Origin: Octopus sinensis
Lineage: Eukaryota
Reading direction: 5' to 3'
NCBI RefSeq assembly: GCF_006345805.1
Contig: NW_021828476.1
Span: 1 to 8,224 of the forward strand
Length of the DNA: 8,224 nt
Shown here: positions 1 through 8,224 of the stretch, piece after piece
Position numbering within the stretch: the stretch's first letter is position 1
Layout: every line of letters begins with the position of its first letter
Notes under the pieces: model-generated
The model's input: the letters and a program-made list of their open reading frames with translations, nothing else
Databases searched by the model: none
What the model was told of the DNA's origin: nothing
Translations under genes and position numbers: made by a program

Positions 1-235
1 ATTTTCTGTATGTATGTTATGTGTTTGTAAGTCCTGGCGTTTTTGTTATGTATTTGTCTGAATAGTTTTTTATCATGCTAATGCACCTGCTGTGATAGGA
101 ATGGTTTCTGTTTTTAGATTCCACATTCTGGTTACCTCATTTCCAGGTCTTTGTATTTTGAAAGTTTCTCCATTTCTTTTAGGAACACGTTGTCATCTGC
201 CGCTATTGATACATCAATTAGAAAGCATTTTTTTT

Positions 236-237
<2 letters not shown>
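1..237 (-). mobile_element. 5'-truncated R4/Dong-clade non-LTR retrotransposon fragment (copy A), C-terminal RLE region; continues off the left edge
   Basis: Manual minus-strand translation, bridging 1-nt indels, gives KCFLIDVSIAADDNVFLKEMEKLSKYKDLE-EVTRMWNLKTETIPITAGAL-MIK..SDKYITKTPGLTN. This matches the D..K..KY..L..E..RMW...IPI..GALG pattern of R4-clade RLE domains. Near-identical to 575-799. Confidence 0.88.
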
Positions 238-292
<55 letters not shown>

Positions 293-307
293 ATTATTAT
301 TATATTA

Positions 308-353
<46 letters not shown>

Positions 354-432
354 TATTATTATTATTATTATTATATTATTATTATTATATTATTATATTA
401 TTATTATTATTATTATTATTATTATGATTATT
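238..432. repeat. (ATT)n/(AAT)n microsatellite, about 195 nt, with scattered 1-nt interruptions
   Basis: Seen directly; separates LINE copies A and B. Confidence 0.98.
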
Positions 433-843
433 CAGTAGTTTTTTTTTATAGCGTGCTTTCACTTCACTACCGAGGCAGCTTGTGTGCCTTGGTATGTTGC
501 TGTGATTTGTTTCTGTGATGACTATGATGGTTATTGTATGAAAAGTGTTCTGCGTAGGATGTGTGCAGTGCCTAGTGTGCAATTTTCTGTAGGTTATATG
601 TGTTTGTAAGTCCTGGCGTTTTTGTTATTTTTTGTATTTGTATGAATAGGTTTTATCAGGCCTAATGCACCTGCTGTGATAGGAATTGTTCTGTTTGTAG
701 ATGTAGATCTACATTCTGGTTACCTCTATTTCCAGGTCTTTGTATTTTGAAAGTTTCTCCATTTCTTTTAGAGACACGTTGTCATCTGCCGGTATTGATA
801 CACGTTGTCATCTGCCGGTATTGATTCATCTGCCAGTATTGAT
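433..843 (-). mobile_element. 5'-truncated R4/Dong-clade copy B with complete 3' UTR and a rearranged 5' junction
   Basis: Minus strand encodes the RLE C-terminus (...EMEKLSKYKDLEIEVTRM...QKIA-LGTAHILRRTL) ending at the TAA at 531-533. A 3' UTR of about 98 nt ends ...AAACTACTG and is followed directly by AATAAT. Homologous to 1-210 and 944-1151. Confidence 0.9.
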
Positions 844-1946: not shown

Positions 1947-2141
1947 TTTCTTTTATTGGCACAGGACCTAATATTTTGAAAGGGAGTCTAGTCGATCACA
2001 TTGACCCTAGCGCTCTACAGGTACTTATTTTATTGACACCTCAAAAGGATGAAAAGCAAAGTCGACCTCGGTGGAATTTAAATTCACTACGTAAAGACGG
2101 ACGAAATACCATTAAGCATTTTGTCTGGGGTGCAAATGATT
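1947..2141 (-). mobile_element. Older tRNA-derived SINE, same tail type as 1251-1464, head clipped by the adjacent trimer
   Basis: Reverse complement gives AAAATGCTTAATGGTATTTCGTCCGTCTTTACGTAGTGAATTTAAATTCCACCGAGGTCGACTTTGC...GATCGACTAGACTCCC...GGTCCTGTGCCAATAAAAGAAA, colinear with the SINE at 1251. Confidence 0.82.
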
Positions 2142-2143
2142 TT

Positions 2144-2730
2144 TATTTCTTTATTGCTCACAAGGAGCGAAACATAGAGGGGACTAACAAGGACAAACAA
2201 AGGGATTAAGTCGATTACATTGACCCTAGTACTTAATTTATCGACCCCGAAAGGATGAAAGGCAAAGTCGTCCTCGGCGGAATTTTGACTCAGATCGTAA
2301 CGGCAGACGAAATACCTATTTCTTTACTACCCACAAGGGGCTAAAATCAGAGAGGACAAACAAGGACAGACAAAAGGATTAAGTTGATTACATCGACCCC
2401 AGTGCGTAACTGGTACTTAATTTATCGACCCCGAAAGGATGAAAGGCAATGTCGACCTCGGCGGAATTTGAACTCAGAACGTAACGGCAGACGAGATACC
2501 TATTTCTTTACTACCCACAAGGGGGTAAACACAGAGGGGACAAACAATGACAGACAAACGGATTAAGTCGATTACATCGACCCCAGTGCGTAACTGGTAC
2601 TTAATTTATCGACCCCGAAAGGATGAAGGCAAAGTCGACCTCGGCGGAATTTGAACTCAGAACGTAGCGGCAGATGAAATACGGCTACGCATTTCGCCCG
2701 GCGTGCTAACGATTCTGCCAGCTCGCCGCC
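2144..2730 (-). mobile_element. Head-to-tail SINE trimer: one full head (2501-2730) plus two headless units (2317-2500, 184 nt; 2144-2316, 173 nt)
   Basis: Three colinear units, each starting TATTTCTTTA on the + strand. Only the 2501-2730 unit has the 5' head GGCGGCGAGCTGGCAGAATCGTTAGC (box A). Box B GAGTTCAAATTCC is present in two units and mutated in the third. Confidence 0.92.
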
Positions 2731-2772
2731 TTTTTATGAGTATTTTTAATACTGATGATGGTGAAGTTTATT

Positions 2773-3729: not shown

Positions 3730-3734
3730 TATAT

Positions 3735-3790
<56 letters not shown>

Positions 3791-3816
3791 TATATATATG
3801 TACATATATATAGAAG

Positions 3817-3847
<31 letters not shown>

Positions 3848-3950
3848 TATTTTACATACATATTATATATTCATATATATGTATATATATATATATGTAT
3901 ATATAATCATATATATTATATATATATCTGTATATATATATATGCATATT
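3730..3950. repeat. Interrupted (TA)n microsatellite
   Basis: Seen directly. Confidence 0.95.
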
Positions 3951-4007
3951 TGTATATAATGTATATGTATGCCTTTCTCTATGTGTTATACATCGCTATC
4001 TCCTACA

Positions 4008-4466: not shown

Positions 4467-4574
4467 TTCTTCTTCTTCTTCTTTTCTTCTTCTTCTTCTT
4501 CTCTTCTTCTTCTTCTTCTTCTTCTTCTTCTTCTTCTTCTTCTTCTTCTTCTTCTTCTTCTCTTCTTCTTCTTC
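4467..4574. repeat. Imperfect (TTC)n microsatellite
   Basis: Seen directly. Confidence 0.96.
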
Positions 4575-4577
4575 TCC

Positions 4578-4715
4578 TCATAATCATAATAATAACAATA
4601 ATAATAATAATAATAATAATAAAATAATAATAATGTAATAATGATGATGACGATGATGACGACGATAACGATAATTACAGTAGTGGTAGTAGTGGTCCTA
4701 ATTTTAGTAGTAGCA
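4578..4715. repeat. Compound (AAT)n-(GAT)n-(GAC)n-(GTA)n microsatellite
   Basis: Seen directly. Confidence 0.88.
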
Positions 4716-5496: not shown

Positions 5497-7216
5497 ATTC
5501 ACTTCTCAGAGCTCTCAATTTCATTTACTCCGGCTAATTCTGTAAGAGCGGACAATAACCTGTTGTCAAGGCTCTCACATGGTCTCTTTCTACGATACTT
5601 AACACCCAAGTACCAATCTCAAAATTCTCGCTCTCCCTAATAAAGAGGTTTTCTGAGCTTGTTCTACCCTTATGTCAATCCCAATATCTCCAACAAGATT
5701 TCTTTGTTATTAATAGTTCTACTACTCCCACAACTACTTGGATGACAGTTCTTTTCTTCATTCATGCAATCTCACCTTTTAGAAGTTTGTACTTATCAGT
5801 CTTTTTCATTTCTTTCTCATCCACTTGTACATCCCCAGGTATGGCAATGTCTACGATCTTGGTTTCCTTCATCATTTTGTCAACTACAACAATATCTTGC
5901 TTCCGAACATCAATCGCTGAATCACACTCGATTGTAAAATCATCAGAGATCTTATACTCATTATTCTCGGTGACGCCTTCTGGATTATGTTCATATCATT
6001 TCAATGTCCCTTGTACACTGTACTTCTCACATGGTCTCCAATGAACATACTTGACTTCTTTACCTCTTTTTGTATTCTTCTTGAGCCAAATTTCTACTCT
6101 CAGTCACAATTTGTGAAACTGTTTCGTTTTTGCTGTCGCACATTATACAAAAAGGCAATTCACTATTATCTTTTTGGAACTTCGTTTAACTAGTTCTCAG
6201 AGCTTGTTCCTGAACGTTGCATATCAATCCTTCAACGCATACTTTCAGATCATTTTTCCTTACCCATCTCCAGGCAATGTTCTTCTCTTTCCTTTCTATT
6301 TTTCTGAGGCATTGTCCGTGTCGCTTTCATTTTCCAGTTGTTCAGCCTTTGTTCTCCATCTTGTTTTTTAATGCTTTTGGGTGTATTGCATTTTCACTTA
6401 ATATCGTGTTGCCATTTCTAAGAGCAACAACCAAAGTTTCAGTCTGCTGTTTGACGTACCATCCCAGACTGTTTTCCCTATTGGCAACAAAGATCTTATA
6501 TCCTACGAGACCGCTTCATCCTTTGTTTCTAGGCACATACAGTCTACCGAGATCGCTTTAAGGGTGCAGTTACTTGATAATTGTCATCCCTTTCCTGGTT
6601 TTTCTATCCATTTCCCCAAGCTCGTTCTTTGTCCATCTAACAATATGTGTACCATATCACATTAAAGAGATAGCCCATGTATCCATTGCCCTGATCTTGT
6701 TCTTTCCATTGAGTCTACTCTCCATAATTAATTCGGTTCTACTAAGGTGTTCTCACCTAAAGATATCCTTCAACTCATTCTCCTTAATTTTGTTGTACTA
6801 CAAAATACCCAGCTACTTATATCCGTCCAACACATTCTCATGCCGTTGGGTATTTCTGCAACATCAAATGAGAATGTTTTACTTTTTTAATGATAAGCAT
6901 GCTACACATTTTAATACCAAATTCCATTCCGATATCCTTACTGAATATCTGTACTATTGAAACCTGACTAATTATTTCACATTCACTCTCTTCGAAGTCA
7001 TCCATTTTTTAAGATGTACCCCGATGTCACTTACCAAGTATCTGCGTGAGGAGTACCATACAAATCACAGAGAGCAATGTGAAGTGTGCCTCCCTTGGTA
7101 TTAACCTTCGCCAGAAAGTCTCCCCATGATGTTAACTCTCTATTCCAGTTCTTCATTGATCTGACAAAATGTAAAATGTTCTTAGAAACCTTTACCAACT
7201 AAAGACTTTCTAAAAC
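5497..7216 (-). mobile_element. Decayed R4/Dong-clade retrotransposon (copy D): second half of RT, zinc knuckle, RLE and 3' UTR
   Basis: See the pseudogene feature. A ~100-nt 3' UTR follows the TAA at 5599-5601 and ends near ...GAGCTCTGAGAAGTGAA at about 5497. Confidence 0.9.
5599..7216 (-). pseudogene. Disrupted RT-RLE ORF of copy D
   Basis: Manual translation: SMKNWNRELTS; MDD (6997-7005); IFSKDIGMEFGIKMC; GYK*LGIL; LNGKNKIRAMDTWA; WTKNELGEMDRKTRK; LHP*SDLGRLYVPRNKG; WVRKNDLK..EGLICNVQEQALRT; degenerate CCHC knuckle CIMCDSKNETVSQIVTES (6096-6149); RKQDIVVVDK..KIVDIAIPGD..EKEMKKTDKY (5790-5905); QKTSLLGRARILRLVLGC*. At least 10 in-frame stops plus several frameshifts. Confidence 0.9.
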
Positions 7217-7221
7217 TCAGT

Positions 7222-7680
7222 AAGTCTTCCTCTGCAGTGCACTTTCCAGGAAGTCATCCCCTCCTTCCCTTCCTCGGATCTTTCCAGGATTACCTCCCTT
7301 CTTCCACTTCTCCCCTCCACGGAACCTTCCAGGAAATTACCCCTTCCTACAGCCCCTCCTCGGGACTTTCCAGGAAGTCTGCCTCTTCCCTCCCTCGGAA
7401 TTTTCCAGGATGTCCCCTCTGCCTCCACTTCCGCGGAAATTTCCAAGAAGTCCTTCCATCCTCTGGGTCTTTCCAGGTTATCTTGTCCCTGATCTCTGAC
7501 TTTTCCAGGTAATCTCGTTCCCAACATCGGAACTTTACTCCTTCCTCCACCTAGGATCTTTCCAGCAAGTCCTCCTCTGCACTGCACTTTCCAGGAAGTC
7601 TCACCCTCCTTCCCTCCTCGGAACTTTCCCGGAAGTCCTTCCCTTCCCCATAAGTCTCCAGGAAGTCATATCCTCCTCCT
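7222..7680. repeat. Interspersed-core tandem array: 13 near-palindromic 18-nt cores separated by variable pyrimidine-rich spacers
   Basis: Cores start at 7239, 7276, 7321, 7362, 7397, 7435, 7465, 7497, 7529 (truncated), 7554, 7584, 7620 and 7652. Consensus GGAACTTTCCAGGAAGTC; spacers 12-27 nt. Confidence 0.92.
7239..7667. promoter_or_regulatory. Putative cluster of NF-kB-like, STAT(GAS)-like and ETS-like motifs (function untested)
   Basis: Exact kB decamer GGGACTTTCC at 7362-7371, and variants GGAATTTTCC (7397), GGAAATTTCC (7435), GGAACTTTCC (7620). TTCNNNGAA at 7244, 7327, 7368, 7441, 7589 and 7626. GGAAGT in five cores. Motif match only. Confidence 0.35.
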
Positions 7681-7681
7681 T

Positions 7682-8224
7682 TCTTGATCTTACAACCATT
7701 TCCAGAGATTAGCTCATTTAATATTGATATCTCCCTTCGCAATGATTCTATCTCAATTTCAATTCTACTCCTCCAGTTTGATTTTCTTTTCGAATTTGGT
7801 ATTGCTGGCTTTTTGGGTGTTAAACAACGTCTTTCGATTACCTGAGCAACAGAGTAAATAATTTCATTTAACTTATTAATATCGGGTTTAAGTTGATGTA
7901 TGATTTCTTGTGTAACGCAGTTGCCAATTTTTATTTGTGTTTTATGTTGGTGTGCATCTGAGAGTTTATGGAGTGGTTCCCTATCATTCATATTTGTATG
8001 CCCTACAACAGCAAGCTCATTCAGAACTTCCTGCTTCATTTCAATGATAGATTTTCTGAGTTGTTCAGCATATAAGTGGTTTTCAAATTCTGTTTCGATA
8101 TCATTTTCCTGGCTGTTTTTTCTAGGGTCATTATATTTTCCTTTTTCTTCAGGCTCTTGAGTGGTTTCGGCAGATGGTCGCCTTTCAGTCAATGTTTGTG
8201 GTCCAATATTCCTCTCCTCTGCTT
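7682..8224 (-). mobile_element. Uninterrupted N-terminal (pre-RT) ORF fragment of a probable R4/Dong-clade element (copy F), open to the right edge
   Basis: The ORF-track frame 7551-8192 has no stop up to position 8224 (AEERNIGPQTLTERR...). Segments VGHTNMNDREPLHKL, DINKLNEIIYSVAQVI and NWRSRIEIEIESLRREISILNEL resemble the pre-RT region of R4-clade ORFs as I recall them. No catalytic motif lies in this piece. Confidence 0.68.

What the first reader, a model, noticed from the sequence alone, without database searches (positions are those of the whole stretch)
7222..7680. CRISPR-like repeat-spacer architecture in eukaryotic DNA: conserved palindromic core with unique spacers
Seen: 13 copies of an 18-nt core (GGAACTTTCCAGGAAGTC, with a TTCC-A-GGAA dyad and a GACTT/AAGTC stem in the best copies). 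They recur every ~25-45 nt, separated by 12-27 nt C/T-rich spacers that are mostly unrelated to each other. In an ordinary minisatellite, core and spacer should decay together; here only the core is held. Inference: either the core is under constraint (protein binding or RNA structure), or the array was built by a mechanism that repeatedly re-copies the core. It is not a true CRISPR (see rejected list).
Basis: partly seen in the sequence, partly recalled or inferred. Interest (0 to 1): 0.75.

Follow-up and report, generated by a model that had tools for sequence, protein, structure and literature searches.

The report
Decayed minisatellite between octopus retrotransposon fragments
The "CRISPR-like" array is an old, worn tandem repeat of a ~37-base unit sitting where two broken octopus jumping-gene fragments meet; it is an ordinary kind of eukaryotic repeat, with one short stretch of each unit kept somewhat better than the rest.

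Summary
The repeat is real. There are 12 full copies of GGAACTTTCCAGGAAGTC, one truncated copy and one interrupted copy, tiling 7220-7691 head to tail at 25-45 nt intervals.

The repeat-spacer reading does not hold:
- The spacers are 88% pyrimidine.
- Their ends next to the core are conserved position by position (z=6.7 upstream, z=3.1 downstream).
- Ten whole 37-nt units align without gaps.
- Only the middle of the pyrimidine run varies in length.

The object is therefore a degenerate ~37-bp minisatellite. Its units are about 65% alike.

An 8-nt block, TTTCCAGG, does vary less (5/96 mismatches against about 25-35% elsewhere). Support is only moderate (P about 0.004-0.04), and the alignment register was set on that block. 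The proposed hairpin shows no covariation. No STAT-, kappaB- or ETS-like motif survives whole in more than 7 of 12 copies.

The array lies exactly at the junction of two same-strand R2-like retroelement fragments on the minus strand:
- a young 5' piece, 91-93% identical to Octopus vulgaris copies;
- an older, unrelated 3' RT piece.

About 300 codons of ORF are missing between them.

No relatives were found in viral contigs, metagenomes or protein databases. Octopus genomes could not be searched at the DNA level. Verdict: ordinary, low interest.

The parts
7220..7691 (+). Degenerate minisatellite of 13-14 head-to-tail monomers, each 25-45 nt (mode about 35-38). The monomer is approximately AGGAAGTC-CTCCCCTCC-(variable)-TCCCTTCCTC-GGAACTTTCC. 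The pyrimidine-rich strand is the + strand.
   Evidence: Core copies start at 7238, 7276, 7321, 7362, 7397, 7435, 7465, 7497, 7554, 7583, 7620 and 7650. There are 10 ungapped copies of a 37-nt unit. The gapped monomer alignment is, and the profile tiling of 7220-7691 is. TRF scores only 7354-7453, at period 35. GC is 0.50 with GC skew -0.47, against GC 0.37-0.40 in the flanks.
7529..7553 (+). Truncated monomer, GGAACTTT followed directly by spacer-like sequence. The CCAGGAAGTC part of the core is missing.
7205..7237 (+). Terminal, interrupted monomer, GACTTTC[TAAAACT]CAGTAAGTC plus CTTCCTCTGCAG. It overlaps the point where RT homology of fragment B resumes.
   Evidence: 7218-7301 aligns with the internal 7563-7646 at 77% (D3). 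There is a weak profile hit at 7220-7247. By eye, the minus-strand translation F*KVFSW lines up with the AFDSVPHSW RT motif of P0039.
7218..7301 (+). First copy of the 84-nt higher-order (two-monomer) duplication.
   Evidence: D3
7563..7646 (+). Second copy of the 84-nt higher-order duplication, 77% identical to 7218-7301.
   Evidence: D3. The monomers at 7238 and 7583 are the most similar pair, at 84%.
7670..8224 (-). Fragment A: the 5' ORF part of a young R2-like non-LTR retroelement. It is open in frame, runs off the window end, and loses homology at the array edge.
   Evidence: It is 92.8% and 90.8% nt identical to Octopus vulgaris OX597823.1 (L001) and OX597814.1 (L004). Homology stops at about 7670-7680. 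The protein hit is P0001. It matches profile positions 170-322.
5602..7216 (-). Fragment B: the decayed 3' two-thirds of a different R2-like retroelement (late RT motifs, linker, zinc-knuckle region, C-terminal nuclease-like region), with many stops and frameshifts.
   Evidence: Its pieces are colinear with a profile of full-length relatives, positions 618/703 to 1198. tblastn with P0039, P0035 and P0041 is. It is only 25-41% aa identical to the near-full-length A copy in L004, with no nt match.

Best explanation
The feature is an old, neutrally decaying minisatellite (a VNTR-type tandem repeat) with a monomer of about 37 bp. It lies in transposon debris of an octopus genome, at the joint between a young 5' fragment of one R2-like retroelement and an older 3' fragment of another.

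Shown:
- The arrangement is head-to-tail tandem.
- Homology covers the whole monomer, spacer ends included.
- There is internal two-monomer duplication, the signature of unequal exchange or slippage.
- Purine/pyrimidine strand asymmetry is strong.
- The hairpin shows no covariation.
- There is no coding signal.

Inferred mechanism:
- A purine/pyrimidine-rich segment of about 37 bp was amplified by replication slippage or unequal exchange.
- The monomers then diverged to about 65% pairwise identity.
- The low-complexity CCTCC/CTTCC run in the middle of each monomer gained and lost bases by slippage. This makes the 'spacers' look unique and unequal in length.
- The non-repetitive TTTCCAGG part has no internal repeat to slip on, so it changed only by substitution.
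- That block is also the anchor on which any reader aligns the copies.
- Later, a deletion or rearrangement joined the array to the 5' part of element A. Purine microhomology may have helped (A has AAGGCAGGAAGA; the array has GGAGGAGGA).

The array has no adaptive-immunity, RNA-structure or demonstrated protein-binding role.
For: - Tiling and whole-unit repeats.
- Conserved spacer ends: (z=6.7 and z=3.1).
- Spacer composition of 88% C+T.
- Higher-order 84-nt duplication at 77%.
- Monomer identity of 65% on average (43-84%), against 91-95% among A copies, so the array is older than, or evolves faster than, the A fragment beside it.
- Hairpin pairing 65.3% against 63.8% in shuffles.
- No Pfam or protein relatives of the array's translations. 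By direct reading, all frames are open only because the consensus monomer contains no TAA, TAG or TGA on either strand.
- The flanks are retroelement fragments.
- A better-kept short core embedded in minisatellite repeat units is a classical observation (Jeffreys interview, PMC2782130).
- VNTRs of about 41-bp units attached to retroposons are known (PMC2119228).
Against: - Under strictly uniform neutral decay, TTTCCAGG should not be 4-6 times less variable than the bases touching it, where indels cannot be blamed. It has 5/96 mismatches against 28/120. The scan permutation gives P=0.0015 on cells and P=0.004 on minimal events.
- A first-order Markov null explains the global similarity of whole spacers (z=1.2), so spacer homology rests on the anchored ends.
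- No octopus genome could be searched at the DNA level. Copy number, allelic length variation and orthologues are therefore unknown.
- The origin of the monomer was not found in the window, L001 or L004.
Confidence: 0.75

Rival explanations
1. Fragment A, the array and fragment B together form one composite, SVA-like non-autonomous retrotransposon. It would have two retroelement-derived modules in the same orientation around a central VNTR, and would be copied in trans by R2-like machinery. The array would then be a family feature present at many loci.
For: - Both fragments lie on the minus strand and are colinear with one ORF. A ends at profile position about 322 and B resumes at about 618, with the array exactly in the gap.
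- A is not truncated in the way TPRT insertions usually are, because it keeps its 5' end and lacks its 3' end.
- A VNTR of about 41-bp units attached to a SINE-R retroposon is a precedent (PMC2119228).
Against: - The only two close A copies that could be fetched continue with normal A sequence past the breakpoint.
- No predicted protein anywhere resembles the array's translations, although all frames are open.
- A is intact and young, while B is riddled with stops, which suggests different ages rather than one transcript.
- Ends, target-site duplications and copy number could not be examined.
Confidence: 0.1
2. The conserved block is a transcription-factor site, and the array is a homotypic binding-site cluster (an enhancer or decoy) kept by selection. 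The consensus overlaps STAT-type TTCCNGGAA, Rel/kappaB-type GGGACTTTCC and ETS-type CAGGAAGT.
For: - The consensus contains TTCCAGGAA, the centre of a designed STAT consensus (CATTTCCAGGAAATC, PMC13595963).
- Copy 7362 contains GGGACTTTCC, the reference NF-kappaB p50 site (PMC4081663).
- The block varies less than its surroundings.
Against: - What is kept is TTTCCAGG, not any complete site.
- TTCNNNGAA survives in 6/12 copies, strict kappaB in 1/12, relaxed kappaB in 5/12, AGGAAGT in 4/12 and the GGAA[AG]T core in 7/12.
- The second STAT half-site (positions 14-16) is among the variable columns.
- The array sits in decayed transposon sequence with no gene evident in the window.
- The motif resemblances come from vertebrate consensus sites. 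Nothing was tested for cephalopod factors.
Confidence: 0.06
3. The array was born in one step at the 5' junction of the 5'-truncated fragment B. The R2-like reverse transcriptase would have jumped repeatedly back onto the same short stretch of template. The block would be the landing microhomology, and the variable pyrimidine runs would come from variable jump points and untemplated additions. The units would then have been unequal from birth.
For: - The array abuts the exact point where RT homology of B starts (about 7216), and its last monomer blends into B sequence (D3).
- The flanking elements' full-length relatives match R2 proteins. From memory, not tested here, R2 reverse transcriptase is known for template jumping and variable 5' junctions.
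- It would explain a re-copied core with length-variable spacers.
Against: - The spacer ends are conserved position by position, as in copies of one monomer.
- A two-monomer block was duplicated at the DNA level.
- No template for the monomer was found in B, A or their relatives.
- No precedent array at other R2-like 5' junctions was available to examine.
Confidence: 0.05
4. A CRISPR-like or otherwise acquired repeat-spacer memory array, with spacers captured from foreign nucleic acid.
For: Only the superficial alternation of a recurring 18-mer with non-identical intervening sequence.
Against: - The repeats are only 74% alike on average (50-100%), and spacers are 11-27 nt.
- The spacers are 88% pyrimidine with conserved ends.
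- There is no repeat hairpin covariation.
- The neighbours are octopus retroelement fragments, and no Cas-like domain was found in the Pfam scan of the pieces.
- There were no matches in viral contigs and only two chance two-copy matches in metagenomes.
Confidence: 0.005

Closest known systems
Minisatellites / VNTRs with an embedded core (Jeffreys-type)
   Same: - Head-to-tail units of tens of bp.
- GC-richer than the flanks.
- Strong purine/pyrimidine strand asymmetry.
- Internal multi-unit duplications.
- A short motif inside the unit that is kept better than the rest. [quoted passage not shown]
   Different: - Here the units are very diverged (65% identity) and the array is short (about 470 bp).
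- The shared block is TTTCCAGG, not the G-rich human core.
- Nothing is known about length polymorphism, or about other loci sharing the block.
VNTR region of SVA / SINE-R composite retroposons (human)
   Same: A tandem array of about 35-50-bp units lies between two transposon-derived modules (PMC2119228, reports 41 bp on average, 17-23 copies). The unit length is variable.
   Different: There is no evidence that the octopus A-array-B unit is mobile or multi-copy. The modules are fragments of R2-like ORFs rather than Alu-like or HERV-K pieces. The two fragments seem to differ in age.
CRISPR arrays
   Same: A recurring short, partly palindromic sequence is separated by non-identical sequence of tens of nt.
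   Different: - The repeats are not near-identical.
- The spacers are not of fixed length, not unrelated and not diverse in composition.
- There are no cas genes.
- The context is a eukaryotic transposon.
- There is no hairpin covariation.
Tandem monomer promoters / homotypic TF-site clusters in retroelements (e.g. mouse L1 5'UTR monomers; from memory)
   Same: Tandem units carrying transcription-factor-like motifs, associated with a non-LTR retroelement.
   Different: The array is not at an element's 5' end. It replaces about 300 codons in the middle of the ORF. The units are about 37 bp rather than about 200 bp. The motifs are not retained whole.

Membership tests
CRISPR array | Near-identical direct repeats of fixed length | tested here: not met
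   Mean pairwise identity of the 18-nt cores is 74% (range 50-100%). One copy is truncated and one is interrupted.
CRISPR array | Spacers of nearly constant length, unrelated to one another | tested here: not met
   Spacers are 11-27 nt and 88% C+T. Their ends are conserved position by position.
CRISPR array | Associated cas genes / leader, in a prokaryotic or viral genome | tested here: not met
   The flanks are octopus R2-like retroelement fragments. There were no Cas domains in the Pfam scan.
Minisatellite / VNTR | Head-to-tail tandem array of units of about 10-100 bp | tested here: met
   The monomer profile tiles 7220-7691 contiguously. There are 10 copies of a 37-nt unit. TRF finds period 35 for the best-kept part.
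Minisatellite / VNTR | Homology extends over the whole unit, not only over a core | tested here: met
   z=6.7 for the 10 nt upstream and z=3.1 for the 10 nt downstream of the core. The test on whole spacers against a Markov null is not significant, so only the mid-spacer is unalignable.
Minisatellite / VNTR | GC enrichment and purine/pyrimidine strand asymmetry | tested here: met
   GC is 0.50 and GC skew -0.47 at 7251-7750, against GC 0.37-0.40 nearby.
Minisatellite / VNTR | Copy-number variation between alleles | not testable with these tools
   No reads or other assemblies of this locus were reachable. Exact-protein look-ups of window ORFs found nothing.
SVA-like composite retrotransposon | VNTR between two transposon-derived modules in one orientation | tested here: met
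SVA-like composite retrotransposon | Many genomic copies sharing the same internal junctions, with target-site duplications and a 3' tail | not testable with these tools
   Only two related loci could be fetched, and neither has the array. The window ends inside fragment A.
Transcription-factor binding-site cluster (STAT / Rel / ETS type) | Complete consensus site retained across copies | tested here: not met
   TTCNNNGAA is retained in 6/12 copies, GGGRNWYYCC in 1/12 and GGAA[AG]T in 7/12. Only TTTCCAGG/YYYYCAGG is common, in 7-9 of 12.
Transcription-factor binding-site cluster (STAT / Rel / ETS type) | Factor occupancy or regulatory activity | not testable with these tools
   Needs experiments.
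R2-superfamily (restriction-like-endonuclease) non-LTR retrotransposon (flanking fragments A and B) | Reverse transcriptase of the R2 type | tested here: met
   The full-length relatives P0039, P0035 and P0041 carry RVT_1 (E 1e-27 to 1e-31). P0039 matches R2 proteins of solved structures (E 5e-28). The window pieces are colinear with their profile.
R2-superfamily (restriction-like-endonuclease) non-LTR retrotransposon (flanking fragments A and B) | C-terminal zinc knuckle plus PD-(D/E)XK-type nuclease, and no N-terminal AP endonuclease | tested here: inconclusive
   The zf-RVT hits are below the Pfam cut-off. The nuclease motif was recognised by eye only. No Exo_endo_phos hit was reported at E<=0.01.

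The most novel reading that the evidence does not exclude
The array is a fossil of reverse-transcriptase 'stuttering'. At the 5' junction of the truncated R2-like insertion (fragment B), the enzyme would have jumped back repeatedly onto the same template stretch. Each jump would have landed on the TTTCCAGG microhomology and added pyrimidine runs of variable length. The minisatellite would then have been created in a single retrotransposition event, with a conserved core and unequal spacers from birth.
Probability: 0.04. Interest if true: 0.55.

Novelty: new member of a known kind. Interest (0 to 1): 0.12.

Why it matters
It matters little beyond annotation. It shows that a repeat-spacer look in eukaryotic DNA can arise from an ordinary minisatellite whose low-complexity half slips in length while its complex half does not. 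Scans should treat such arrays as false positives for 'CRISPR-like' architecture.

Two small points may interest transposon biologists:
- the array sits precisely at a joint between two R2-like retroelement fragments;
- one 8-nt block is kept better than its neighbours.

Both could be settled by a simple genome-wide search.

Tried and rejected
- RNA/DNA hairpin (GACTT/AAGTC): no covariation, with pairing equal to shuffles. Folding the whole array gives z=-3.1 (+) and z=-1.9 (-), as expected for GGAA/TTCC-rich repeats.
- Coding repeat: a 151-codon open frame crosses the array, but the consensus monomer has no stop triplet in any frame. Unit lengths are not multiples of 3. There were no Pfam hits and no protein relatives at E<=10.
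- Known RNA family or tRNA: none in the window.
- Viral or metagenomic relatives of a two-core pattern: 0 viral. The 2 metagenomic hits are chance two-copy matches in an AT-rich contig and in a bacterial gene with a local duplication.
- Origin of the monomer from element A or elsewhere: the monomer profile finds nothing in the rest of the window, L001 or L004. By-eye resemblances to the TE strings ...TTCCAGGCTCACCATCCC... and ...GACCTGGAAAT... are short and were judged to be chance.
- Simple nested insertion of B into A: no remainder of A lies anywhere downstream in the window.
- Close relatives of B, to define its 5' junction: none found.
- Locating this very locus in other assemblies through exact ORF products: nothing on record.
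- Literature on octopus minisatellites: no paper found.

Full report
**Observation**

The + strand between 7238 and 7667 holds 12 full copies of GGAACTTTCCAGGAAGTC with 1-5 mismatches. No comparable match lies elsewhere in the window on that strand. A truncated copy (GGAACTTT...) sits at 7529. An interrupted copy sits at the low-coordinate edge, about 7205-7225. Start-to-start distances are 38, 45, 41, 35, 38, 30, 32, 32, 25, 29, 37 and 30 nt, and spacers are 11-27 nt. The octamer TTTCCAGG occurs 9 times in the window against 0.15 expected from shuffles, and 7 of these are in the array.

**Anatomy**

The claim that the spacers are mostly unrelated does not survive testing.
- The repeat finder reports 10 copies of a whole 37-nt unit at 62-84% identity without gaps. 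That unit is 8 nt of 'spacer', the core, then 11 nt of 'spacer'. It also reports an 84-nt, two-monomer duplication, 7218-7301 against 7563-7646, at 77%.
- I cut the units inside the core and aligned them with gaps. They give one monomer, AGGAAGTC-CTCCCCTCC-(variable)-TCCCTTCCTC-GGAACTTTCC. The length variation is confined to the middle of the pyrimidine run.
- The 10 nt upstream of the core are conserved column by column relative to shuffles within each row (z=6.7, P<0.0002). The 10 nt downstream are conserved too (z=3.1, P=0.006). Both results hold after removing the duplicated monomers.
- A profile of the monomer tiles 7220-7691 head to tail, with full-length hits for most units. The profile was built from those same units, so this shows tiling, not independent support.

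Two caveats apply. Similarity of whole spacers exceeds their own mononucleotide shuffles (z=4.5). It does not exceed a first-order Markov model of pooled spacers (z=1.2). The middle of the spacers is therefore indistinguishable from generic CCTCC/CTTCC low complexity. TRF itself scores only 7354-7453, at period 35 with 2.8 copies, which shows how decayed the array is. Mean monomer identity is 65%, with a range of 43-84%.

**Is only the core held?**

Mismatches to consensus in ungapped register:

| Segment | Mismatches |
|---|---|
| TTTCCAGG | 5/96 |
| The other 10 positions of the 18-nt 'core' | 28/120 |
| 10 nt upstream | 34/120 |
| 12 nt downstream | 52/144 |

What stands out is an 8-nt block.

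Grouping of the low-variation columns into one block is unlikely under column permutation (P=0.0015). Cells are not independent in a duplicated array, so I also counted minimal events (alleles minus one per column). That gives:
- P=0.04 within the core;
- P=0.011 over 28 columns;
- P=0.004 for the scan.

The register was set on this block, which biases the comparison in its favour. Even so, the columns touching it cannot be blurred by indels. I conclude that there is moderate, not compelling, evidence for uneven decay.

**Tests of the proposed constraints**
- *Hairpin.* With the stem GACTTT/GGAAGTC, 65.3% of cells pair, against 63.8% in shuffles. Sliding the partner by -1 gives 61%. There is no support.
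- *Coding.* A 151-codon frame is open across the array on the minus strand. But the consensus monomer contains no TAA, TAG or TGA on either strand (read directly from the sequence), and unit lengths are not multiples of three. Neither Pfam nor the 5.8-billion-protein search (E<=10) finds any relative.
- *Protein binding.* The consensus overlaps a STAT-type palindrome (TTCCAGGAA; designed STAT consensus CATTTCCAGGAAATC, PMC13595963). Copy 7362 holds the reference NF-kappaB site GGGACTTTCC (PMC4081663). From memory, the consensus also overlaps an ETS-type CAGGAAGT. None of these survives as a whole. TTCNNNGAA is found in 6/12 copies, the strict kappaB pattern in 1/12, AGGAAGT in 4/12 and GGAA[AG]T in 7/12. 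The second STAT half-site falls in variable columns.

**Context**

The minus strand is the sense strand of retroelement remains.

Fragment A:
- Window 8224..7670 is an open frame. It is 92.8% and 90.8% identical in DNA to two Octopus vulgaris loci, OX597823.1 (L001) and OX597814.1 (L004).
- In both loci the element continues past the breakpoint with ...KIVRKYG.STREEL..KQKVQAKAQRIRRFEKRI... L004 then continues with a nearly full-length RT ORF.
- In the window, homology stops at about 7670-7680, in a purine-rich stretch at the array's edge.

Family assignment:
- Full-length relatives from the representative search carry RVT_1 and a weak zf-RVT.
- They match R2 retrotransposon proteins of solved structures (E 5e-28).

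Fragment B:
- A profile of these relatives maps the window colinearly. Piece 8222..7554 matches profile positions 170-322. Then 7198..5602 matches positions 618/703 to 1198 through many stops and frameshifts (tblastn).
- About 300 profile positions are missing, and the array of about 470 bp sits exactly there.
- This 3' part is not the same element as the 5' part. It has no DNA match to L004 and only 25-41% protein identity to it.

The locus is therefore a young 5' fragment (A), the array, and an older 3' fragment of a different R2-like family (B), all on one strand. No remainder of A lies downstream, so a simple nested insertion does not explain it. The monomers (65% alike) are far more diverged than the A copies are from one another (91-95%). 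By inference, the array pre-dates its junction with A, or it mutates much faster.

**Elsewhere**
- A two-core pattern finds nothing in viral contigs. In metagenomes it finds two chance two-copy matches.
- The monomer profile finds nothing in 43 kb of other octopus DNA.
- B has no close protein relatives.
- This locus could not be found through exact ORF products.
- No tool here searches octopus genomes at the DNA level. Copy number, allelic variation and orthologues therefore remain unknown.

**Interpretation**

The best-supported reading (confidence about 0.75) is an ordinary, old minisatellite in transposon debris. The unit has a non-repetitive half (GGAACTTTCCAGGAAGTC) and a low-complexity pyrimidine half. 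The pyrimidine half slips in length. That produces unequal, seemingly unique 'spacers', while the complex half changes only by substitution and serves as the alignment anchor. Internal two-unit duplication shows the usual unequal-exchange dynamics.

A short, better-kept core inside minisatellite units is itself a classical observation (PMC2782130). VNTRs attached to retroposons are also known (PMC2119228). The residual puzzle is why TTTCCAGG varies less than its immediate neighbours.

Rivals that address this puzzle:
- a composite SVA-like element (confidence 0.10);
- a selected factor-binding cluster (0.06);
- birth of the array by reverse-transcriptase template jumping at B's 5' junction (0.05).

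A CRISPR-like acquisition array is excluded on every defining feature tested.

**Verdict**

This is a real feature of a known kind: a new, undescribed locus of the minisatellite/VNTR class in an octopus genome. Interest is low (0.12). The most useful follow-up is a genome-wide DNA search with the monomer profile and the two junctions, together with a comparison of orthologous loci.

Noticed in passing
window 2229-2682: A 184-bp unit is repeated 2.5 times at 93% identity. Its minus strand carries a tRNA-T-arm-like string (GAGTTCAAATTCCGCC, by eye), and the translated motif HPFGVDKLST recurs at 2323..2090 and 2733..2575. It looks like a tandemly duplicated SINE-like element. ARAGORN and Rfam find nothing.
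   Followed up: partly
window 76-239 and 712-801 (minus strand): There are two more short fragments of the C-terminal, nuclease-like part of R2-like retroelement ORFs (tblastn). They sit in near-duplicate stretches, each next to copies of ACACGTTGTCATCTGCCGGTATTGAT (TRF 774-844). The same sequence occurs in L004 near 7244, so it is a dispersed repeat.
   Followed up: partly
window 238-432, 844-943, 1156-1249, 1465-1545, 3730-3970, 4467-4642: Long microsatellites are unusually dense: (ATT)66, (TTA)33, (TAT)31, (TTC)27, (TA)124, (TTC)37 and (ATA)22. The ATT/AAT runs also match the microsatellite that follows the retroelement copy in L001.
   Followed up: no
L004 9959-13500 (Octopus vulgaris OX597814.1) and L001 9983-11840 (OX597823.1): L004 holds a nearly full-length copy of the A family, whose ORF is broken by only a few frameshifts. 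L001 holds an internal-deletion derivative that jumps from the N-terminal region straight to the post-RT region. The family may have been recently active.
   Followed up: partly
window 7238-7667, + strand: Each monomer reads as a pyrimidine tract followed by YYYYCAG|G (9 of 12 copies). Two copies continue as CAG|GTAAT or CAG|GTTAT. From memory, this resembles splice-acceptor and splice-donor consensus. Whether the locus lies in an intron of a + strand gene is unknown.
   Followed up: no
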